Virus record (IMG/VR): IMGVR_UViG_3300007735_000804
Coordinates: 1-64,000 of that record
DNA: 64,000 nucleotides
Direction: 5' to 3' (one strand)
Shown: positions 22,925 to 34,105 of the stretch, piece after piece
Layout: each line of letters begins with the position of its first letter
How positions within the stretch are numbered: the stretch's first letter is position 1
Position numbers and translations under genes: made by a program
The notes under the pieces: generated by a model
Told to the model about the DNA's origin: nothing
Database searches by the model: none
What the model saw: only the letters and a program-made list of their open reading frames with translations

Positions 22925-23601
22925 TGATACATTGTTCTCCTATAAATTTCATTTGGGCAGGTATCAACATCAGAAACTTCTTGTTTGGTCAAGAACTTAA
23001 TTCCGCCCAGAAGTTTTGCTCCAATAAAAATATCAGCAGATTTTTCACACATTAAAGTTGCAGCAACACAATCTTTTTTAGATGCAGATGCTGTTATTAT
23101 ACCATGATTTTGAAGTAGAATCAACTTCGGAAAGAAACCTTCATGATCTACAAATGCAGAAACATGTTTTTCAACTAACTTTAAAATTGCCTCTCCAGGG
23201 GGAGCATAAGGAACTGTACAAGACTTTGTTCCGTTTCTTACAATTTGATCAGGAAACCATCTATGGCTAGCAAACTGATGCAACTGACTTGAACAAAGAA
23301 TTTTAGTTGTATGTGGTGGATGTGTATGTGCAATAAAATTAATCTCTGGAAAAGTCTTCATAATCCAAGCATGAAATGACGTTTCAATGCTTGGTTTTTT
23401 ATGTGAAGGATTTAACTGAACTCCATGAATATTACATAGAGTTAGATCTTCCTCTACTAGAGTATGAAGACTTGTCCCACTTGCCTTAATTAAGAATGTA
23501 TTTTCATTTTGGCGCATAGAAACATTTCCTTCGCCACAAATAGTGTAGTCACATATTTCATATGATAGATCTAGAAGTTCTTTAATTGGTGAAATAGTCA
23601 T
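22921..23601 (-). CDS. Class II aldolase/adducin family protein
   Basis: EGNVS, KPSIETSFH, HTHP, LQNHG. Confidence 0.88.
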   Translation of the reverse strand: MTISPIKELLDLSYEICDYTICGEGNVSMRQNENTFLIKASGTSLHTLVEEDLTLCNIHGVQLNPSHKKPSIETSFHAWIMKTFPEINFIAHTHPPHTTKILCSSQLHQFASHRWFPDQIVRNGTKSCTVPYAPPGEAILKLVEKHVSAFVDHEGFFPKLILLQNHGIITASASKKDCVAATLMCEKSADIFIGAKLLGGIKFLTKQEVSDVDTCPNEIYRRTMYQ

Positions 23602-25138
23602 TTTTATAAGAGTAGGGGTGCCAGTTTACTTTATTAAAAAATGTTTGCCAATATTTATAGGTGTTTAAATCATTGGGTGTTCCCCAACAAATATATTCAT
23701 CAACTTCAAAATTTCTAACAATATATCCTAGTTCAATTGCTTCATTGAGAAGATTATCAATATAAAATTCACCATTGGTTTTTATATTTTTTTCATATAA
23801 ATTTTTAAGGGAATTGAGATAAATGTCTTTATTTCTAAAGAACATTGTTCCAACAATTGCATATTCCTCTAAAGGATTATTACCAGTGAAATTTTTAACA
23901 TTTACTTTTCTAATAATATTTTCAGCATCTACATCTAACCAAGAATACATATTGGGATTATAATAACTTGTATAATTGTTTCTATAACTCCAAACTATAA
24001 TATCATTATCAGTATCACCAACCAATTCTAAAAATTTATCTGCATCGTAAAATACTCCATTATCACAAGTAGAAACAAGGATAGATCCATCACCACAATG
24101 TTCTAGAATCTTCTCCGTAGTGCAAGCCTGACCTTCCAGAACTTCATCAATCCATAAAACTTCCCCTTTTGGGTGTGGTGATGTTTGTCTTCTTAAGCAA
24201 GCATAGATTGTCCTATCAGTTTTAGGTAAGCAGCGAACTGCTTGTTCAAACATATTCTTATCATTAACTTGAATGAATGGTTTTGGTTGCTCATAACCTT
24301 CTTTAGAAAATCTACTACCAGCACCTGCCATAGGAAGTGCAAGAGTGCAGTTCTCAAGTCTAACTTCTTTTTGCCCCTTTAATGCTTTAGAATAATAATC
24401 AGACCACTTCAAATACATATCCAAATCAAGAGGAGTTCCCCACTGAAGCATATGGGAAATTTCATAAACTAAAGAAGTAAGATTATCATTATACAAAAAA
24501 TTATAAATTAGACTTACATAATATTCTCCACTTAAATTTACATCATCATCCATCATCTTTTGAAAATATTTTTTAATATACTTTCCTTTCCCGAAATAAT
24601 ATGTTCCAGTGGAAGCATATTCGTTCATCTTATTGTCAGTAAATGGATGTTTCTCCTGAACTTCTAAAATTTTATTAGAATCATCTACCTTACAAAAAGC
24701 ATAGTTATCACTACCCAACATGTGGGGGTGAAATCCAGTATAACAAACTACACATCCATCACAATTAGATTCATTCACAAACTTTTCAAAATCATCATAA
24801 TCCCAATACATTGAGAAGTCGCAGTAGTTAATAATGACTTGCTCTTCATCATCTATAAGATCATATACAAATGAAGTTGTATAGACTGGTCCTTTTTTGT
24901 GATTTGATATAATTTCTACATAACTATTATCAACTAAAGATTCTAATAAAAATTTTACATTATATAATTCTTCGTGAATTTTATTTACTATAAAAATAAA
25001 TTCAGAATTTTTTGGATACAAATCAATGATGTGCTCAATAACCTTTTTACCATCAATCTCAATGAGATATTTTGGAATTTCATAACCGACGTTTGCAAAT
25101 CGGTTACTCATTCCAGACATGGGTATTATGACTTTCAC
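23582..25138 (-). CDS. Tandem two-domain sugar-phosphate nucleotidyltransferase
   Basis: Two copies of the PMxGxxxRF...PK motif; GEYY/GEFY and WGTP twice. Confidence 0.82.
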   Translation of the reverse strand: MKVIIPMSGMSNRFANVGYEIPKYLIEIDGKKVIEHIIDLYPKNSEFIFIVNKIHEELYNVKFLLESLVDNSYVEIISNHKKGPVYTTSFVYDLIDDEEQVIINYCDFSMYWDYDDFEKFVNESNCDGCVVCYTGFHPHMLGSDNYAFCKVDDSNKILEVQEKHPFTDNKMNEYASTGTYYFGKGKYIKKYFQKMMDDDVNLSGEYYVSLIYNFLYNDNLTSLVYEISHMLQWGTPLDLDMYLKWSDYYSKALKGQKEVRLENCTLALPMAGAGSRFSKEGYEQPKPFIQVNDKNMFEQAVRCLPKTDRTIYACLRRQTSPHPKGEVLWIDEVLEGQACTTEKILEHCGDGSILVSTCDNGVFYDADKFLELVGDTDNDIIVWSYRNNYTSYYNPNMYSWLDVDAENIIRKVNVKNFTGNNPLEEYAIVGTMFFRNKDIYLNSLKNLYEKNIKTNGEFYIDNLLNEAIELGYIVRNFEVDEYICWGTPNDLNTYKYWQTFFNKVNWHPYSYKNDYFTN

Positions 25139-25788
25139 AATTCAAAAGTGTCTTTAATTTCTTGAATTAGTTCTGCATTATTTGAAGCAACACCCAATCC
25201 ACAAGAATTTGTAAAATTAACTTTGGGAACTTCTAATTGAGAAAAGAAAAGACCAACAGTATCAGGATTAGAAACAGTATCGTGAAACAAAATTACACCA
25301 TCCTCTTTAAGGAGAGGTGCCCAAGTCTCACAATCATTTTTACAGTTTTGGTAGTCATGAAGACCATCGATATGTAAAAGATCTATTTCTTTATCCCAAG
25401 TTTTTGCAACATCATCAAAATACCCTTTGATGATCTCCAAATTATTCAGTTTAAGCTTTTCTTTAGCCGATATTACAAATTCATAATCACGATCTTGTCG
25501 AATTCCATGCTTTGAAATATCAAAACAATCTATACCATAAACTACATTTTCTTGACACATTGCCATGACAAATGCAGAATAACCATAGTCAACTCCCAAT
25601 TCAACTGTAATTTCAGGTTTGATTCTTTCAATCAACCATTTAACAAATTCATAGTGACCTTTTGGAGGAACATTCCAAGCAGATGGAATTGCTCCTAGAA
25701 TTTCACTCACATTGTCATCATCGAGAGATAAAACATATTCTCTCCAATCTTCTCTTTTATTTTCAAACCAAGAAAAATTTTCAACCAT
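25135..25788 (-). CDS. Class I SAM methyltransferase (Methyltransf_24-like)
   Basis: VELGVDYGYS, LHIDGLHDY, ILFHD. Confidence 0.85.
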   Translation of the reverse strand: MVENFSWFENKREDWREYVLSLDDDNVSEILGAIPSAWNVPPKGHYEFVKWLIERIKPEITVELGVDYGYSAFVMAMCQENVVYGIDCFDISKHGIRQDRDYEFVISAKEKLKLNNLEIIKGYFDDVAKTWDKEIDLLHIDGLHDYQNCKNDCETWAPLLKEDGVILFHDTVSNPDTVGLFFSQLEVPKVNFTNSCGLGVASNNAELIQEIKDTFEL

Positions 25789-26824
25789 TTAATTGCTCCT
25801 TAATCCAATTGTAAGTTTTACTAATTCCTTCTTCAAGGGTTTGGGAATAATCCCACCCAAGTTTTTCACGAATCAAATCATTATTAGAGTTACGTCCACG
25901 AACACCCAAAGGACCAGGGACATGATTCTTCTCAACTTTTTTACCAGCAACTTTTGCAGCAGTATCTGCAAGTTGATTAATAGTGACCATTTCTTCAGAT
26001 CCAATATTCACAGGACCGAGAAAATCAGATTGCATTAAACGACGAGTTGCTTCAATACATTCATCAATGTAGAGGAATGAACGAGTCTGCTTACCATCAC
26101 CCCAGATCTCAATTTCACCAGCGTCTTCAGTAAGTTCTGCAACCTTACGGCAAATTGCTGCAGGTGATTTTTCTTTACCACCAGTCCAAGTTCCTTCAGG
26201 TCCAAAAATATTGTGATAACGAGCAACTCTTACAGGAATCCCGTAGTTGCGGTGATAGGCAAAGTAAAGACGTTCAGAGAAAAGTTTTTCCCAACCATAC
26301 TCTGAATCAGGGGCAGCAGGGTAAGCATCGGATTCTTTTAGACCTGGGTTATCTACATCCATCTGTGCATATTCTGGATACATGCAAGCAGATGAAGAAT
26401 AGAAAATCTTTGTTGTATTTTTTCCACACTTCTCATTCAATTCTTTAACTGAACGAAGAACATTTAAATTGATAGTCGCAGAATTATTCATAACATCTGC
26501 ATCATGATCACCCGTAAAAATATATCCAGCGCCGCCCATGTCAGCAGCAAACTGATAGATCTCATCAAAGGGTTGGATGTAACGATAAGGAACAGAGTTA
26601 TAAAAGTTACCTCTGTCACCTTTATATTCAACAACCTTACTTACAAAATTTGCATTAGTAAGATCTCCTCTAATAAATTCATTTGCTTCATGTTTAGAAT
26701 ATTCTGGATACTTAAGGTCTACACCACGAACCCAATAACCTTCGGATCGCAGTCTACGCACCATATGACTTCCAATAAAACCACCAGCACCAAGTACAAG
26801 TGCTTTCTTGACGTATTGACTCAT
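25781..26824 (-). CDS. GDP-mannose 3,5-epimerase-like SDR
   Basis: GAGGFIG, AADMGGAG, SSACMYP, YGWEK, GVRGRNS. Confidence 0.88.
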   Translation of the reverse strand: MSQYVKKALVLGAGGFIGSHMVRRLRSEGYWVRGVDLKYPEYSKHEANEFIRGDLTNANFVSKVVEYKGDRGNFYNSVPYRYIQPFDEIYQFAADMGGAGYIFTGDHDADVMNNSATINLNVLRSVKELNEKCGKNTTKIFYSSSACMYPEYAQMDVDNPGLKESDAYPAAPDSEYGWEKLFSERLYFAYHRNYGIPVRVARYHNIFGPEGTWTGGKEKSPAAICRKVAELTEDAGEIEIWGDGKQTRSFLYIDECIEATRRLMQSDFLGPVNIGSEEMVTINQLADTAAKVAGKKVEKNHVPGPLGVRGRNSNNDLIREKLGWDYSQTLEEGISKTYNWIKEQLNG

Positions 26825-26856
26825 AGATAAAAATTACTCCTAGTATATATTCTACA

Positions 26857-27657
26857 TTACAAACAAGTAGTTTGCAAGCCCTTTTCTAAAGAGATACTTT
26901 GATTGAATCCCAAAGATTTAAGTTTACCAACATTCAAGTAATAATCAAGTGCTGGATTAGGTAGATAATTAATTGTACTTTTGCTATCTAATATTTTTTT
27001 ACTATATTCAACAGCATCTTTAAATTCTGTAATTACTCCAGTTCCTATATTATAAATCTGATTAGTTTTCGAGTTATTCATTAATTGATAAAAAGCATTG
27101 CAGACATCATCTACAAAAATAAAATCTCTTTTGAACTTGCCATAGTTGTAAAGATCTACATCTTGATCATTTTTTAATAGATTAATGATATAACCAATAA
27201 CATTTTTCTTAAAAGAGCAATTCTTATCTTTACCATAAACATTTGCTAATCGAAAGATACGATACTTAACTCCAAATGTTTCGCAGAATGTTATTAACAT
27301 CTGCTCTGCAGTTCTTTTAGTTATTGAATAAAACCCTTTAGGATTACAAGAATCTTCCTCAGAAGCATTAATCACTTCAGAACCATAGACAAATCCAGAA
27401 CTGACAAAATTAAAAGTGATATTTTCACTTCTACAGTTATCTAGAACATCCATCAATACATTTAGATTTGTATTAATATCTACGTGAAGGTCTTCGTAGA
27501 TATTATGATTGGTGGTTGTGCTGATGCAATACAAGATATTATTAGTCTCTGGAACTTTCTGGTCTCTTGGAATTTTTACTCCACCATAAAGTTCGCAGAA
27601 CCGACCACCAATAAATCCAGTCGCACCAAATACAGATGTGTCACTCATACTTATCAC
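26857..27657 (-). CDS. NAD-dependent epimerase/dehydratase
   Basis: GATGFIG, YSITK, RDFIFVDD. Confidence 0.85.
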   Translation of the reverse strand: MISMSDTSVFGATGFIGGRFCELYGGVKIPRDQKVPETNNILYCISTTTNHNIYEDLHVDINTNLNVLMDVLDNCRSENITFNFVSSGFVYGSEVINASEEDSCNPKGFYSITKRTAEQMLITFCETFGVKYRIFRLANVYGKDKNCSFKKNVIGYIINLLKNDQDVDLYNYGKFKRDFIFVDDVCNAFYQLMNNSKTNQIYNIGTGVITEFKDAVEYSKKILDSKSTINYLPNPALDYYLNVGKLKSLGFNQSISLEKGLQTTCL

Positions 27658-28177
27658 AATCCTTAAATGATACTCCCTTAAGATCTTTGTCAGAAAGAAT
27701 CGGAGATGCTAAATTCCAATTAATATTCAAATCTTCATCATTCCACAAAAGAGTACGTTCATGTTCTTGGTAACGATAATCAGTTACCTTATATAATACT
27801 TCTGCTTGATGTGAGAGAACACAAAAACTATGAGCAAATCCAGGTGGAACCCATAACTGTTCAGATCCTGGCGAAAGTTTAACTCCTATCCATTCTCCAA
27901 ATGTTGGGGAACTTTTACGCAAATCAACAATTACATCATAAATCTCACCAGCAATACATCGAACAAGTTTACCTTGTGCATGTTCAATCTGATAATGCAA
28001 ACCTCGTAAAACATTTTTTGTAGAAACTGAATGACAGTCCTGTACAAATTCATAATTTCCAATAATTTTTTGAATATCACGAAGATTAAAAGACTCAGTG
28101 AAAGAACCTCGACTATCTTCAAAAATATTTGTGCTAATAATGTATGCGTCTTTTAGACTAGTTCCGATTGCGTTCAT
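27641..28177 (-). CDS. rmlC: dTDP-4-dehydrorhamnose 3,5-epimerase
   Basis: DSRGSF, LRGLHYQ, VPPGFAH, LSDKD. Confidence 0.93.
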   Translation of the reverse strand: MNAIGTSLKDAYIISTNIFEDSRGSFTESFNLRDIQKIIGNYEFVQDCHSVSTKNVLRGLHYQIEHAQGKLVRCIAGEIYDVIVDLRKSSPTFGEWIGVKLSPGSEQLWVPPGFAHSFCVLSHQAEVLYKVTDYRYQEHERTLLWNDEDLNINWNLASPILSDKDLKGVSFKDCDKYE

Positions 28178-29084
28178 ACCATTTAATTGTTTTATCAAGT
28201 CCATTTTCAAAAGTAAATCTAGGAGACCAGTCCAATTTATTTTTTATCTTTGTAATATCTGTAGAATAACGACGATCATGTCCCAGTCTATCATCTACAT
28301 ATTCTATCATATCTTCAGTCATATTCATACGCTCTAAAATCATCTTAACCAAATCAATGTTGCGAAGTTCGCATTCACCACCTATATTATACTTTTCACC
28401 AATAGAACCCCTTTCAGCAATTGCTGAAAGTGCCTCACAATGATCTTGAACATATAACCAATCCCGAATTTGTTTACCATCACCATAGATAGGAACTTTC
28501 TTACCAACTAAAAGATTGCTAATAGTTTTAGGTATCATTTTTTCATGATACTGCCTTGGTCCATAGTTATTAGAACAGTTTGTAATTATGGTGGGCAACC
28601 CATAAGTATTATGATATGCCATTACAAAATGATCACTTGCTGCTTTAGATGCCGAATATGGATTCCTTGGAGAATAATTAGACTCTTCAGTGAATGAACC
28701 CGCATTTATGGAACCATAAACTTCGTCTGTAGAAATGTGAAGAAACTTTTCAATTCCATTCTTAACAGCAAGATTTAAAAGATTAACTGTTCCCTCAATA
28801 TTTGTATGAATGAATTCTGAACAATTTTTAATTGAGTTATCAACATGACTTTCTGCAGCAAAATGAAAAATTGTTTTAATTTTGTGCTTATCAAAAACAT
28901 ATTGACAACTCTGTTCAGAAGCAATATCAATTGTATAAAATTTGACTGGATCTGGTATGTTGTGCCAGTCTGCAGCATATGTCAATTTATCAATACAAAT
29001 AAGTTCTTCATCAGTTTTTGTCGATAAGTGATGAAGAAAATTACTTCCAATAAATCCTGCACCACCTGTAACTAAAATTGCCAT
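28158..29084 (-). CDS. rmlB: dTDP-glucose 4,6-dehydratase
   Basis: GGAGFIGSN, AAESHVD, STDEVYG, PYSASK, CSNNYGP. Confidence 0.95.
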   Translation of the reverse strand: MAILVTGGAGFIGSNFLHHLSTKTDEELICIDKLTYAADWHNIPDPVKFYTIDIASEQSCQYVFDKHKIKTIFHFAAESHVDNSIKNCSEFIHTNIEGTVNLLNLAVKNGIEKFLHISTDEVYGSINAGSFTEESNYSPRNPYSASKAASDHFVMAYHNTYGLPTIITNCSNNYGPRQYHEKMIPKTISNLLVGKKVPIYGDGKQIRDWLYVQDHCEALSAIAERGSIGEKYNIGGECELRNIDLVKMILERMNMTEDMIEYVDDRLGHDRRYSTDITKIKNKLDWSPRFTFENGLDKTIKWYERNRN

Positions 29085-29087
29085 TGA

Positions 29088-29588
29088 TTAATCACTTCTT
29101 AATGAATATTTTTCTAAAAGTTGTGGGGAGTATTGTTCTAAAACAGGTGCATCTCCACTCTCTTCTCTTTTTTTCTTCTCAAGATCATATACTCTATTTC
29201 TAATTTCAGTTGAAGAATACTTATGTTTTCTCAAATGATAAAATAAGTCTATATCATGATCAATACAATACTGTTTACCAGTAAAGTCTCTATCTACATA
29301 CTCTTCACTCAAAAAACGGATATGAATTGTTTGAGTTTGAATTAGATTAAGTAAATCTTCTTCAGTCTCATAAACTAGAATCTCATCAACATATTTACAT
29401 GCTTGAAGTTGAACATAACGTTCATATACAGATTGAGCTGGTTTATTTTTAACACCAGGTCTATCAATTGTTGGATCAACTTGAAGTGCAACTTTAAGAT
29501 AATCACACATTTCTTTTTCCATTTTGAGCATTGTAACATGCCCAGCATGAAATAAATCAAACGAGCTACAATTAAATCCTATTTTCAT
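29088..29588 (-). CDS. Cytidylyltransferase, TagD-like
   Basis: FDLFHAGH (HxGH), SSTEIR. Confidence 0.85.
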   Translation of the reverse strand: MKIGFNCSSFDLFHAGHVTMLKMEKEMCDYLKVALQVDPTIDRPGVKNKPAQSVYERYVQLQACKYVDEILVYETEEDLLNLIQTQTIHIRFLSEEYVDRDFTGKQYCIDHDIDLFYHLRKHKYSSTEIRNRVYDLEKKKREESGDAPVLEQYSPQLLEKYSLRSD

Positions 29589-30577: not shown

Positions 30578-30651
30578 TCGGGCATAGAGGATTTGAACCT
30601 CTGGCCTTTCCGCCCCAAACGGAACGCGCTACCAAACTGCGCTAATGCCCG
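30578..30651 (-). tRNA. tRNA-Pro(UGG)
   Basis: Cloverleaf; TTCCG-TT TGG GG-CGGAA; GGTTCAAATCC. Confidence 0.93.
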
Positions 30652-30691: not shown

Positions 30692-30844
30692 CTACTTCTT
30701 GTGCCCCCTGTCAAACGGAGCCCAGTGCTGCCATCCGTATTTATGAATTGCCCAGATACCCATAATAGGCAGAACAATCAAAAGATATCCAATAATACCA
30801 AGAGTATAAGGATTTTCTAATACCCATCTTGCAAAGTGTCCCAT
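30692..30844 (-). CDS. 50-aa single-TM protein (not in ORF track)
   Basis: MGHFARWVLENPYTLGIIGYLLIVLPIMGIWAIHKYGWQHWAPFDRGHKK; TAATG coupling. Confidence 0.65.
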   Translation of the reverse strand: MGHFARWVLENPYTLGIIGYLLIVLPIMGIWAIHKYGWQHWAPFDRGHKK

Positions 30845-31065
30845 TAATATCCCCTCCAAGTCTTAAATTCGTAGTAAAAATATTGGTCAAGAATTTTATC
30901 ATCTAATGGAGCATTCTCTTCCCTATGTGCCCACTCAACACAGAAATCTACAATCTTATGGTCGTGTAATGAACTATGTCCCCACATTCTTACGAATGCA
31001 GTTGCAGCAAAGTGATATCGTTGCCTAATGTGCGGTTCCGTTTCCCTTATAATCTTTGGAGTCAT
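30844..31065 (-). CDS. Hypothetical cyanophage protein
   Basis: 73 aa ending YFYYEFKTWRGY. Confidence 0.6.
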   Translation of the reverse strand: MTPKIIRETEPHIRQRYHFAATAFVRMWGHSSLHDHKIVDFCVEWAHREENAPLDDKILDQYFYYEFKTWRGY

Positions 31066-31147
31066 AGTATCCTCCTTTTGTTCCGAAATAGAGTGTTGTT
31101 AAAACAAACGGGACTGAAACAAATAAAAGTGCTTTTGCGAGTAACAT
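31025..31147 (-). CDS. ndhP: NDH-1L small subunit NdhP homologue, 40 aa (not in ORF track)
   Basis: MLLAKALLFVSVPFVLTTLYFGTKGGYYDSKDYKGNGTAH matches the NdhP TM plus FGTxNGFYDxDxYHGNGSAH signature. Confidence 0.85.
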   Translation of the reverse strand: MLLAKALLFVSVPFVLTTLYFGTKGGYYDSKDYKGNGTAH

Positions 31148-31314
31148 TATGAAAATACTCCTGGAACATAATCAATTCTTTCACGAAGTTCATCTAGAAG
31201 GACGCCATACTCCTTGAACCTTCTATCACCAGCAATGAAACATCTTTGTCTCATCCATACTGCATCTGCGATTAATTTTAGTTCGTAATCTGAAAAATCT
31301 TTAAAGCGTTCCAT
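31147..31314 (-). CDS. 55-aa micro-protein, paralogue of 7384..7545
   Basis: Core ADAVWMRQRCFIAGDRRFKEYG. Confidence 0.75.
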   Translation of the reverse strand: MERFKDFSDYELKLIADAVWMRQRCFIAGDRRFKEYGVLLDELRERIDYVPGVFS

Positions 31315-31321
31315 ATTTCTC

Positions 31322-31417
31322 CTAGTGGGGTGGATATGCATGATTGAGTCCCCATACAATGAAGCACCCTATCGCACCAAAAATAGTTAATGCCTTGAAC
31401 AATAGATTAGTATTCAT
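31322..31417 (-). CDS. 31-aa single-TM peptide resembling the NdhQ C-terminus
   Basis: MNTNLLFKALTIFGAIGCFIVWGLNHAYPPH versus recalled NdhQ ...ILGFIAGLIWWALHTAY. Confidence 0.45.
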   Translation of the reverse strand: MNTNLLFKALTIFGAIGCFIVWGLNHAYPPH

Positions 31418-31511
31418 TATCCTCATCCTCGTAAGTAGATGGTTCTTCTATCTTTTGCTGTAAAACTCTTTGTTGTAGTTCTTGAATATCTTCGTCCGTA
31501 ATAGATATCAT
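31407..31511 (-). CDS. 34-aa acidic micro-protein
   Basis: MISITDEDIQELQQRVLQQKIEEPSTYEDEDNEY; ATGA coupling. Confidence 0.5.
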   Translation of the reverse strand: MISITDEDIQELQQRVLQQKIEEPSTYEDEDNEY

Positions 31512-32652: not shown

Positions 32653-33090
32653 CTATTTTTCAGTAAATGAACGCAACATCCAAATGTATTTTCCGTGTGC
32701 TTCGTTTAGATCATCAAGAAGATTAATCGTTCCTCTTGACTTTTGCTCTTCCGCTTCAACAGCAGCAGCATCAAACATAGCAACTATTTTTTTATGATCC
32801 TCAAGAAGATCACGAATCATTTCCATTGAAGAAATGTTAGTCTTTGCTTCAGAAACCCCAGAAACTTCCAATACTCGTGAAAGAGAACTGATAGGTTTAA
32901 TACCTAAGAATCTCATATGTTCTGATAATCTATCAATCTCTTCCTGAATAGTAAGATATTGCTCCCCAAACAAATCATGAATCTGTTTAAAGTCTTCCCC
33001 TACAACATGCCAATGATAAACCCAAGTTTTCTGAAAGAGTAAAAAGAGCGATGCTTGCGTATCACTCAGAAGTTTATATAGAGATTCCAT
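32653..33090 (-). CDS. dps: Dps / ferritin-like DNA-protection protein
   Basis: YHWHVVG, IHDLF, IDRLSE, KYIWML. Confidence 0.9.
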   Translation of the reverse strand: MESLYKLLSDTQASLFLLFQKTWVYHWHVVGEDFKQIHDLFGEQYLTIQEEIDRLSEHMRFLGIKPISSLSRVLEVSGVSEAKTNISSMEMIRDLLEDHKKIVAMFDAAAVEAEEQKSRGTINLLDDLNEAHGKYIWMLRSFTEK

Positions 33091-33591: not shown

Positions 33592-33963
33592 TCAGAAGGA
33601 ATAACGCACCTTCAGTTCACCGCCCATATCAAACACTTTGGACAGTCCACCATATTCACCAGTCACTTTGGCATTCACACCAACATTCTTGGAAACTTTG
33701 GATTTCACACCAACTTCACCAACGGTCACATACTCATTACGGGTAGAACCAGTATTCCACTCATAACCAGGACCGATCTCACCAAAAACAACAACGTTCT
33801 TGGCAACTTTATCTTCATAACCGATACGCAGTTCGGTTTGTGCGGACTTATAGTTGCCGTCAGAAAGAGCAGTAGTGGTCTTGCTTTCTACATAAGGGCC
33901 AGCAAATGCAGCCGAAGCAAGGAAAGGAGTTGCAGCAACAGCTGCGATTGCGGATTTAAACAT
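33592..33963 (-). CDS. Small outer-membrane beta-barrel protein
   Basis: Signal peptide MFKSAIAAVAA...AFA, alternating beta-strands, C-terminal RYSF. Confidence 0.75.
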   Translation of the reverse strand: MFKSAIAAVAATPFLASAAFAGPYVESKTTTALSDGNYKSAQTELRIGYEDKVAKNVVVFGEIGPGYEWNTGSTRNEYVTVGEVGVKSKVSKNVGVNAKVTGEYGGLSKVFDMGGELKVRYSF

Positions 33964-34105
33964 AATAGTACCTCTATATTTTCTCGCAGAGTTTCCTGCG
34001 GATGTAAGGAGTTTCGACAAACTCCCTTTAGTTCAGTGACTCAACAAGTATTTGAGGTTTCATCACTTGATTTATTTAGATATTAACGGGAATTCGGTTT
34101 CCCGA

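What the first reader, a model, noticed from the sequence alone, without database searches (positions are those of the whole stretch)
31025..31417. Hidden NDH-1 module: ndhP and a candidate ndhQ-like peptide
Seen: a 40-aa ORF ending YFGTKGGYYDSKDYKGNGTAH (clear NdhP signature), and two genes upstream a 31-aa TM peptide ending IVWGLNHAYP, resembling the NdhQ C-terminal helix. Established: NdhP and NdhQ stabilise NDH-1L, which drives respiration and cyclic electron flow; viral ndhP has been reported. Inference: the phage supplies both small subunits to bias NDH-1 toward ATP-generating cyclic flow. I do not know of a described phage ndhQ.
Basis: partly seen in the sequence, partly recalled or inferred. 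Interest (0 to 1): 0.75.

Follow-up and report, generated by a model that had tools for sequence, protein, structure and literature searches.

The report
Phage ndhP plus a truncated ndhQ
A freshwater cyanophage carries, in one small operon, copies of both tiny "glue" peptides (NdhP and a shortened NdhQ) that hold the host's NDH-1L energy complex together; the NdhQ-like gene has not been described in phages, and it also points to an overlooked NdhQ gene in Prochlorococcus/Synechococcus-type hosts.

Summary
The 40-aa ORF (31025-31147, minus strand) is NdhP. It matches the solved T. elongatus NdhP chain at E 4e-8 and occurs in 370 phage records.

The 31-aa ORF (31322-31417, minus strand; 34 aa if it starts at 31426) is a conserved cyanomyovirus gene under purifying selection (dN/dS about 0.27). 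It is a homolog of the transmembrane helix and C-terminus of NdhQ:
- An NdhQ profile scanned over all 1,772 six-frame segments of the window hits only this ORF (E 2.4e-5).
- Profile-profile comparison gives 96.7% probability, E 3e-10.
- Shuffle controls stay far below these scores.

The phage profile and the canonical NdhQ profile both pick the same single locus in each of five picocyanobacterial genomes. These unannotated or "hypothetical" peptides of about 38-45 aa bridge the two families. A 2025 survey listed no NdhQ in such organisms.

In 20 viral contigs ndhP starts 5 nt after the stop codon of the Q-like gene. The phage form lacks the conserved N-terminal NRGIMKF-GADSP segment.

Incorporation into NDH-1L, and any boost to cyclic electron flow, remain inference. 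I rate this a new member of a known kind (a photosynthetic auxiliary gene), of moderate to high interest.

The parts
31025..31147 (-). ndhP: a 40-aa single-TM peptide, the NDH-1L-specific subunit P homolog (coding 31028-31147, stop 31025-31027).
   Evidence: PDB NdhP 6khi_P at E 4.3e-8 and 6hum_P at E 4e-7, aligned to the C-terminal end. phrog_2173 at E 1e-20. Found in 370 phage records. Host NdhP sequences carry the same FGT(K/R)GGYY...GNGTAH tail.
31322..31417 (-). ndhQ-like gene: a 31-aa single-TM peptide (34 aa if the ATG at 31426 is used), homologous to the TM helix and C-terminus of NdhQ. The N-terminal NRGIMKF-GADSP segment is absent.
   Evidence: The NdhQ HMM gives a single hit in the window at E 2.4e-5. 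All 36 distinct phage variants score 10.9-29.6 bits, against a maximum of 11.0 for shuffles. hhalign gives 96.7% probability, E 3.3e-10. The column-shuffle control scores 43.2 for the real alignment against a maximum of 20.8. PDB NdhQ chains are 2 of only 3 hits for the family profile. dN/dS is 0.27.
31147..31314 (-). A 55-aa soluble ORF (phrog_2064, unknown function) inserted between the Q-like gene and ndhP. It is absent from the contigs where Q and P are directly adjacent.
   Evidence: phrog_2064 at E 8e-23, covering residues 12-67 of the 70-aa TTG reading. A GGAG ribosome-binding site precedes the ATG at 31314. In L008-type loci Q and P are 5 nt apart.
30844..31065 (-). A 73-aa ORF (phrog_593, unknown function) that overlaps the 3' end of ndhP by 41 nt. 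It is a recurrent neighbour of Q and P in S-CAM4 and S-CAM9.
   Evidence: phrog_593 at E 3e-13. Homologous ORFs in L001 and L002. No host homolog in 5 picocyanobacterial genomes.
30692..30859 (-). A 55-aa 'gp123'-like small membrane protein (phrog_1184), the conserved downstream neighbour of the Q-like gene in marine and freshwater cyanomyoviruses.
   Evidence: phrog_1184 at E 3e-25. It lies directly after the Q-like ORF in S-CAM4 and S-CAM9. No PDB hit and no host hit.
31407..31511 (-). A 34-aa acidic ORF immediately upstream. Its stop codon overlaps the first codons of the Q-like gene. It has no family match.
30578..30651 (-). tRNA-Pro(UGG), which ends the small-gene cluster.
   Evidence: ARAGORN.

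Best explanation
The window comes from a 213-kb freshwater T4-like cyanomyovirus. On its minus strand, a run of tightly packed small genes includes two host-derived auxiliary genes for the two single-helix peptides specific to the NDH-1L form of photosynthetic complex I.

One is a full-length NdhP. The other is a minimal NdhQ that keeps only the transmembrane helix and the lumenal W-G-L-N-x-A-Y-P tail.

In the solved cyanobacterial complex, NdhP and NdhQ sandwich NdhD1 from opposite sides. They contact NdhF1, lipids and beta-carotene. Loss of either one disassembles about half of NDH-1L, and loss of both disassembles nearly all of it.

The inferred mechanism is as follows. During infection the phage peptides insert into the thylakoid membrane with the N-terminus on the cytoplasmic side. 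They occupy the P and Q sites on host NdhD1/NdhF1. This keeps NDH-1L assembled while host protein synthesis declines. Respiratory and PSI-cyclic electron flow, and therefore ATP supply for phage replication, would then continue.

Shown here: the genes are real, conserved, under purifying selection, homologous to NdhP and NdhQ, and often adjacent to each other.

Inferred: membrane insertion, binding to NDH-1L, and the physiological effect.
For: NdhP identity.

NdhQ homology:
- An NdhQ HMM built from 120 homologs hits only this ORF among 1,772 window segments (E 2.4e-5; the next best is 0.23).
- All 36 distinct phage variants score 10.9-29.6 bits. The best of 10,800 composition-preserving shuffles scores 11.0, and reversed sequences score 3 bits or less.
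- hhalign of phage against NdhQ gives 96.7% probability, E 3.3e-10. The real score is 43.2, against a maximum of 20.8 in 200 column shuffles.
- A PDB-wide search with the phage profile returns only 3 sequences at E<=10, and two are T. elongatus NdhQ.
- The invariant TM and C-terminal residues of NdhQ (G29, W37, L39, A42, Y43) are all kept in the phage family.

Bridge through the hosts:
- The phage profile finds a hit, usually one, in 5 of 5 picocyanobacterial genomes and in 234 of 301 genomes of that family.
- The canonical NdhQ profile finds the same loci as its only significant hits, at E 2.6e-12 to 3.5e-5.
- hhalign of host against NdhQ gives 98.0% probability, E 1.7e-13, including the G-A/S-D-S-P motif. 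hhalign of phage against host gives 98.6%, E 1.2e-15.

Genomic linkage: ndhP lies downstream on the same strand within 2 kb in about 40 of 85 loci. In 20 loci it starts 5 nt after the Q stop codon.

Specificity control: the neighbouring phage TM peptide has no host hit.

Selection: dN/dS is 0.27.

Role of P and Q in NDH-1L: PMC6992706, PMC7021789 and PMC11794437.
Against: - The phage peptide lacks the N-terminal 19 residues. These include the most conserved block of canonical NdhQ (D3, R6-F11, G13-D15 and P17 are invariant). It may bind differently or not at all.
- A single-sequence search did not reach PDB NdhQ. The family profile reaches it only at E 0.48.
- The host peptide has never been shown to be an NDH-1 subunit. 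A 2025 survey lists no NdhQ for WH8102, WH5701 or CCMP1375.
- Q and P are not obligatorily linked. S-CAM4, DSL-LC03 and a complete 215-kb contig have Q but no ndhP (with the positive control). Most of the 370 ndhP-bearing phages show no detectable Q.
- Transcription was not demonstrated.
Confidence: 0.6

Rival explanations
1. The peptide is a true NdhQ homolog but acts as a remodelling or antagonist factor. Because it lacks the cytoplasmic N-terminal segment, it competes with host NdhQ for the NdhD1 site. This would alter NDH-1L, for example by changing its stability, its supercomplex contacts or the balance with the CO2-uptake forms NDH-1MS/MS', rather than simply replacing the host subunit.
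For: The N-terminal motif that is invariant in canonical NdhQ, and partly kept in hosts as G-G/S-D-S-P, is completely absent from all 36 phage variants. Phage sequences form their own well-supported group (98/99) on a long branch, away from host and canonical forms. Q occurs without ndhP in some complete phage genomes.
Against: Every conserved membrane and C-terminal residue is retained, which is the pattern expected for a working subunit. The gene is frequently fused into an operon with a full-length ndhP. Some host forms may themselves be nearly as short (L174-type sequences). The precedent from other photosynthetic auxiliary genes such as psbA, petE and ndhP is substitution rather than antagonism (my own knowledge).
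Confidence: 0.17
2. The resemblance to NdhQ is real at the sequence level, but the picocyanobacterial and phage peptides are not NDH-1 subunits. They would be a diverged paralogous or convergent small membrane peptide serving another thylakoid complex (for example cytochrome b6f, as PetM does) or another membrane function.
For: The best single PDB hit of the family profile is PetM (E 0.32), marginally ahead of NdhQ (E 0.48). The window peptide alone weakly resembles CP43 helix V (E 0.07). No biochemical data exist for the host peptide. The host gene shares no synteny with canonical ndhQ.
Against: None of the 32 phage members matches a Pfam PetM model at E<=10. The CP43 match disappears when the family profile is used. 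The canonical NdhQ profile finds the host locus as its only significant hit in each genome, and no other NdhQ candidate exists there. Host against NdhQ aligns over 36 columns, including the GADSP motif, at E 1.7e-13. Adjacency to ndhP points to NDH-1L.
Confidence: 0.13
3. The 31-aa ORF is not a functional gene: it is a chance ORF or a decaying remnant.
For: It is very short and unannotated in several isolate genomes ('none' under the match for S-SCSM2R, ACG-2014h and ACG-2014i). There is no Pfam or NCBIfam model. Metatranscriptome contigs do not cover it.
Against: It is intact in 85 loci, with 36 distinct protein variants and 40 distinct core DNA sequences. Mean pS is 0.56 against pN 0.24, and median dN/dS is 0.27. 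The F, W, G, A and Y columns are invariant. Its position before the gp123-like gene or before ndhP is conserved. It is packed in operon style, with an overlapping stop codon and ribosome-binding site.
Confidence: 0.03

Closest known systems
NdhQ, the NDH-1L-specific single-TM subunit of cyanobacterial photosynthetic complex I (T. elongatus, PDB 6KHI/6L7O chain Q; Synechocystis Norf6)
   Same: Single TM helix. Shared conserved pattern L/F-G-x-I ... I-x-W-(A/G)-L-x-x-A-Y. Significant profile and profile-profile matches over 24-25 columns. Positively charged residues precede the helix, which is consistent with the same N-in orientation.
   Different: 31-34 aa rather than 44-47 aa. The N-terminal S-D-L-N-R-G-I-M-K-F-x-G-A-D-S-P block is missing entirely. 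The motif is W-G-L-N and ends in Y-P-(Q/H), where most canonical forms have W-A-L...A-Y-A. It is encoded by a virus.
Unannotated or 'hypothetical' 38-45-aa peptides of Cyanobiaceae (for example Synechococcus BL107_11241 and Prochlorococcus SS52 EV11_0213)
   Same: These are the closest relatives: hhalign 98.6% probability, E 1.2e-15, with an identical F-I-V-W-G-L-x-N-A-Y-P core. They are the probable source of the phage gene.
   Different: Host forms keep a short acidic N-terminal stretch with G-G/S-D-S-P, which ties them to NdhQ. Phage forms start 4-9 residues before the helix. Phage sequences form a separate group in the tree. The donor lineage is not resolved.
Viral NdhP (cyanophage auxiliary metabolic gene reported from metagenomes, P-TIM68 and S-SCSM2R)
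   Same: The window's 40-aa ORF is a typical member. Like the Q-like gene, it encodes an NDH-1L-specific 'glue' peptide.
   Different: NdhP is full length in phages and far more widespread: 370 records against about 30 with a detectable Q-like gene.
PetM (cytochrome b6f subunit VII)
   Same: It is a short single-TM thylakoid peptide. There is a weak match of the phage profile's N-terminal 24 positions (E 0.32).
   Different: It has no W-G-L-N-x-A-Y-P tail. The match needs a gap. No phage member matches a Pfam PetM model at E<=10. I rejected it as the family.

Membership tests
NdhP | Peptide of about 40-50 aa with one TM helix followed by the F-G-T-(K/R)-x-G-x-Y-(D/N)-x-x-x-Y-x-G-(N/D)-G-x-A-H tail | tested here: met
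   Aligns end to end with solved T. elongatus NdhP (6khi_P at E 4.3e-8, residues 6-40 against 10-44). The tail is identical in pattern to the host NdhPs listed.
NdhP | Physical subunit of NDH-1L bound to NdhD1 | not testable with these tools
   Needs biochemistry on infected cells.
NdhQ | Significant match to an NdhQ family profile | tested here: met
   HMM of 120 NdhQ homologs: window-wide E 2.4e-5, and it is the only hit. hhalign 96.7% probability, E 3.3e-10. Shuffle controls.
NdhQ | Conserved TM and C-terminal residues (G29, I31, W37, L39, A42, Y43 of the canonical alignment) | tested here: met
   The corresponding columns G14, I16, W22, L24, A27 and Y28 are invariant or nearly so, except I16, which is I in most members and V or M in the rest, in 32 phage sequences.
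NdhQ | Invariant N-terminal cytoplasmic block D-x-x-R-G-I-M-K-F-x-G-A-D-x-P | tested here: not met
   Absent from all 36 phage variants. Only the G-x-D-S-P part survives in the host peptides.
NdhQ | Orthology chain to bona fide NdhQ through cellular homologs (reciprocal, single-copy) | tested here: met
   In 5 of 5 picocyanobacterial genomes the phage profile and the canonical NdhQ profile pick the same coordinates. There is no second significant locus.
NdhQ | Presence in purified NDH-1L, with stabilisation of the NdhD1-NdhB junction | not testable with these tools
   Known for T. elongatus and Synechocystis. Untested for the host and phage peptides.
NdhQ | Genomic association with other NDH-1L-specific genes (supporting, not defining) | tested here: met
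   ndhP starts 5 nt after the Q stop in 20 viral loci and lies within 2 kb in about 40 of 85 loci. The association is not universal.
PetM (PF08041) | Match to the family model | tested here: not met
   0 of 32 members match at E<=10. There is only a weak PDB hit at E 0.32.
CP43/IsiA/Pcb helix V fragment | Match retained when the whole peptide family is used | tested here: not met
   The single-sequence hit at E 0.07 is absent from the profile search.

The most novel reading that the evidence does not exclude
The phage peptide is a working, minimal NdhQ. Its host relatives would be the 'missing' NdhQ of Prochlorococcus and of marine and freshwater Synechococcus and Cyanobium. NdhQ would then be universal in thylakoid-bearing cyanobacteria. 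Its functional core would be only the roughly 25-residue helix plus the W-x-L-x-x-A-Y tail. Cyanophages would have captured both NDH-1L-specific glue peptides, and in S-SCSM2R also ndhD, to keep the respiratory and cyclic NDH-1L form assembled during infection.
Probability: 0.5. Interest if true: 0.7.

Novelty: new member of a known kind. Interest (0 to 1): 0.62.

Why it matters
Cyanophage auxiliary genes show which host functions limit phage production. NDH-1L drives PSI-cyclic and respiratory electron flow, which yields ATP without net NADPH or CO2 fixation.

A second NDH-1L-specific subunit in phages, often fused into an operon with ndhP, strengthens the case that phages actively maintain this complex.

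The finding also has a host-side payoff. It identifies a conserved candidate NdhQ, usually present as a single hit per genome, in 234 of 301 sampled genomes of the Prochlorococcus/Synechococcus/Cyanobium family. A 2025 evolutionary survey of NDH-1 subunits recorded none in such organisms, so this changes the inferred history of the subunit.

The phage version is a natural deletion experiment that defines the minimal part of NdhQ kept under selection. All of this can be tested directly by complementation, BN-PAGE and top-down mass spectrometry.

Tried and rejected
- Pfam and NCBIfam have no model that matches either peptide. PHROGs gives only families of unknown function.
- The search for homologous proteins refuses queries under 40 aa. 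I therefore collected the phage family by tblastn and by an IMG/VR pattern scan.
- A single-sequence PDB search of the Q-like peptide gave CP43 helix V (E 0.07) and no NdhQ. I rejected the CP43 lead because it vanishes with the family profile.
- I rejected the PetM lead (E 0.32) because no member matches the Pfam PetM model.
- A scan of 185,579 species genomes for the exact phage motif F[IV][IV]WGLN[NH]A found nothing. The host forms differ at one or two of those positions and were found only by profile search.
- The original NdhP/NdhQ paper (PMC3040284) is not held, so I could not check what it says about marine picocyanobacteria or phages.
- Synteny between the marine Synechococcus gene and Leptolyngbya ndhQ is not shared and gives no information.
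- The neighbouring small ORFs (gp123-like, phrog_593, phrog_1953, phrog_1096) have no PDB match (phrog_593 not searched). The first two also have no host homolog, so I have no evidence that they belong to NDH-1.
- The phage genome has no NdhD/F-type gene (PF00361).
- Expression evidence is inconclusive. One exact 151-nt contig over 31187-31337 comes from a library that is probably DNA, and the true metatranscriptomes cover only neighbouring genes of relatives.
- The tree of 109 short sequences does not resolve a donor lineage.

Full report
**What is in the sequence**

The window is the first 64 kb of a 213,274-bp IMG/VR virus record that CheckV rates as complete. Its nearest isolates are T4-like Synechococcus myoviruses. 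Public runs that hold this stretch are riverine, lake and freshwater metagenomes.

Between 30.6 and 31.9 kb the minus strand carries a run of tightly packed small genes. In transcription order they are:
- a 34-aa acidic ORF (31407-31511);
- the 31/34-aa hydrophobic ORF (31322-31417, or to 31426);
- a 55-aa phrog_2064 ORF (ATG 31314, to 31147);
- the 40-aa ORF (31025-31147);
- a 73-aa phrog_593 ORF (30844-31065, overlapping the previous gene by 41 nt);
- a 55-aa 'gp123'-like membrane ORF (phrog_1184, 30692-30859);
- tRNA-Pro.

The stop codon of the hydrophobic ORF overlaps the GGAG of the next gene. That gene's stop overlaps the ATG of the 40-aa ORF as TAATG.

**The 40-aa ORF is NdhP**

It aligns to the very C-terminus of the solved T. 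elongatus NdhP chains (6khi_P at E 4.3e-8, 6hum_P at E 4e-7). It belongs to phrog_2173 (E 1e-20). It has the same tail as the host NdhPs printed in the supplement of PMC12038448.

tblastn finds it in 370 phage records, all of them cyanophages. Nearly all are annotated 'hypothetical' or not annotated at all. Viral ndhP is already in the literature, so this part is known.

**The 31-aa ORF is a real, conserved gene**

tblastn finds it in 30 isolate cyanophage records and in nothing else. A pattern scan of IMG/VR confirmed 106 stretches, and 80 loci were fetched.

From these loci I extracted 36 distinct peptides. A 32-sequence alignment shows invariant F19, W22, G23, A27 and Y28, and nearly invariant G14, L24, N25 and P29.

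Over 40 distinct core DNA sequences, pS is 0.56, pN is 0.24 and median dN/dS is 0.27.

In S-CAM4 and S-CAM9 the gene sits immediately before the gp123-like gene, as it does in the window.

Several relatives have one to three extra in-frame Met, Arg or Lys codons upstream. These coincide with the purine-rich ribosome-binding region. I therefore give both possible starts, 31417 and 31426.

**Test of the NdhQ idea**

No Pfam or NCBIfam model exists. A single-sequence PDB search did not reach NdhQ.

I took bona fide NdhQ sequences from Supplementary Data 4 of PMC12038448. I used the S. elongatus PCC 7942 sequence to collect 127 homologs.

The results with an HMM of 120 of them were:
- Scanned with all filters off over every stop-to-stop segment of at least 20 aa in the window (1,772 segments), it gave one hit, the candidate, at E 2.4e-5 and 20.6 bits. 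The next best was E 0.23.
- All 36 phage variants scored 10.9-29.6 bits, aligned to HMM positions 20-43.
- The best of 10,800 shuffles of the same peptides reached 11.0 bits. Reversed peptides reached 3 bits or less.

Profile-profile comparison of the phage alignment with an NdhQ alignment gave 96.7% probability, E 3.3e-10, over 25 columns. With alignment columns shuffled 200 times, the best score was 20.8 against 43.2 for the real alignment.

The phage profile searched against all 177,635 distinct PDB sequences returned three sequences at E<=10. They were PetM (0.32) and two versions of T. elongatus NdhQ (0.48 and 1.8).

PetM fails as an alternative because none of the 32 members matches the Pfam PetM model. 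The single-sequence CP43 resemblance disappears at the profile level.

The canonical invariant residues in the helix and tail (G29, W37, L39, A42, Y43) are all conserved in the phage family. The invariant N-terminal block (D3, R6-F11, G13-D15, P17) is absent.

**The hosts supply the bridge**

PMC12038448 lists no NdhQ for Synechococcus WH5701, Synechococcus WH8102 or Prochlorococcus CCMP1375. A scan of species-representative genomes for the exact phage motif also found nothing.

I used ndhP to obtain handles on picocyanobacterial genomes. A six-frame profile search then found a significant locus in each of five genomes (E 1e-8 to 8e-5). It found a hit, usually one, in 234 of 301 sampled genomes of that family.

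The ORFs are about 35-45 aa. They have a short acidic N-terminus that often contains G-G/S/A-D-S-P, then a helix, then F-I-V-W-G-L-x-N-A-Y-P.

The canonical NdhQ profile, run on the same five genomes, picks exactly the same coordinates as its only significant hits (E 2.6e-12 to 3.5e-5).

hhalign gives host against NdhQ at 98.0% probability, E 1.7e-13, over 36 columns that include the GADSP region. Phage against host gives 98.6%, E 1.2e-15.

In public databases these peptides are 'hypothetical protein'. Examples are Synechococcus BL107_11241, seen on hundreds of contigs, and Prochlorococcus SS52 EV11_0213.

As a specificity control, the neighbouring phage membrane peptide and the phrog_593 protein have no host match.

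In a maximum-likelihood tree of 109 sequences:
- canonical NdhQ is one clade (100/99) that attaches beside the WH5701-type host forms;
- 35 of 36 phage sequences form one group (98/99);
- the donor lineage is not resolved, because the alignment has too few columns.

**Linkage to ndhP**

In about 40 of the 85 phage loci, ndhP lies downstream on the same strand within the 2-kb flank. In 20 loci (L008-L025, L036, L037) the ndhP ATG follows the Q stop codon after 5 nt.

The window type has one inserted gene between the two. S-CAM9 has the order P...Q.

The linkage is not obligatory. S-CAM4, DSL-LC03 and a complete 215-kb contig have Q but no ndhP. The positive control for that search rang in five other records.

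S-SCSM2R is reported to carry ndhD and ndhP. It also has an unannotated Q-like ORF. The window's own genome has no NdhD/F-type gene.

**Mechanism**

Cryo-EM and genetics in T. elongatus and Synechocystis establish several points:
- NdhP and NdhQ sit on opposite faces of NdhD1.
- They contact NdhF1, lipids and beta-carotene.
- They are absent from NDH-1MS.
- Each single deletion disassembles about half of NDH-1L, and the double deletion disassembles almost all of it (PMC6992706, PMC7021789, PMC11794437).

From this I infer that the phage supplies both peptides to keep NDH-1L assembled during infection. That would sustain cyclic and respiratory electron flow and ATP supply.

The retained helix and tail residues and the operon with ndhP favour substitution. 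The complete loss of the N-terminal block leaves room for a remodelling or antagonist role.

Nothing here shows membrane insertion, binding or a phenotype. Transcription could not be demonstrated from public runs.

**Verdict**

- ndhP is already known in phages.
- The Q-like gene is, as far as the searchable literature goes, an undescribed phage auxiliary gene.
- It is best filed as an N-terminally truncated NdhQ homolog: a new member of the known class of photosynthetic-complex AMGs.
- The by-product is arguably of equal interest. It is a candidate for the overlooked NdhQ of the Prochlorococcus/Synechococcus/Cyanobium lineage.

Noticed in passing
Host loci L156-L160 and L164-L193 (for example L159:1492-1605:-, L167:1489-1608:-, L164:1492-1605:-): Picocyanobacteria (Prochlorococcus, marine and freshwater Synechococcus, Cyanobium) encode a 35-45-aa NdhQ-like peptide, usually one hit per genome. 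It is unannotated or labelled 'hypothetical'. A 2025 survey of NDH-1 subunits recorded no NdhQ in these organisms. It was found in 234 of 301 sampled genomes. Many of the listed genomes without a match are 1.6-1.7 Mb in size.
   Followed up: partly
L004:1492-1596 (Synechococcus phage S-SCSM2R, PQ898602): There is an unannotated 34-aa Q-like ORF in a phage reported to carry ndhD and ndhP. That phage would then hold three components of the NDH-1L-specific module.
   Followed up: partly
Phage collection, with window 31025-31147 as query: ndhP is present in 370 cyanophage records but is almost always annotated 'hypothetical' or missed. In S-CAM9 an overlapping 106-aa CDS is annotated instead. A 2025 paper calls ndhP uncommon in cyanophages.
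   Followed up: partly
window 30844-31065 (-) against 31025-31147 (-): The phrog_593 ORF overlaps the last 41 nt of ndhP in another frame. Its N-terminal residues are conserved in S-CAM4, so the overlap appears genuine.
   Followed up: no
window 30692-30859 (-): The 'gp123'-like 55-aa membrane protein (phrog_1184, motif HKYGWxHWxPF) is the constant downstream partner of the Q-like gene in marine and freshwater phages. It has no PDB or host homolog, and its function is unknown.
   Followed up: partly
window 23582-29588 (-): This is a sugar-nucleotide and polysaccharide cluster. It contains two nucleotidyltransferase-type genes, a methyltransferase, three epimerase/dehydratase genes, a dTDP-4-dehydrorhamnose 3,5-epimerase and a cytidylyltransferase.
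   Followed up: no
window 32653-33090 (-) and 33592-34020 (-): A ferritin/Dps-like gene and a cyanophage outer-membrane-protein-like beta-barrel gene flank the tRNA clusters. The window holds ten tRNAs in all.
   Followed up: no
L002 (S-CAM4), L003 (DSL-LC03), L078 (215-kb IMG/VR contig): These complete or near-complete phage genomes carry the Q-like gene, but ndhP is not detectable in them. The two genes are therefore gained and lost independently.
   Followed up: yes
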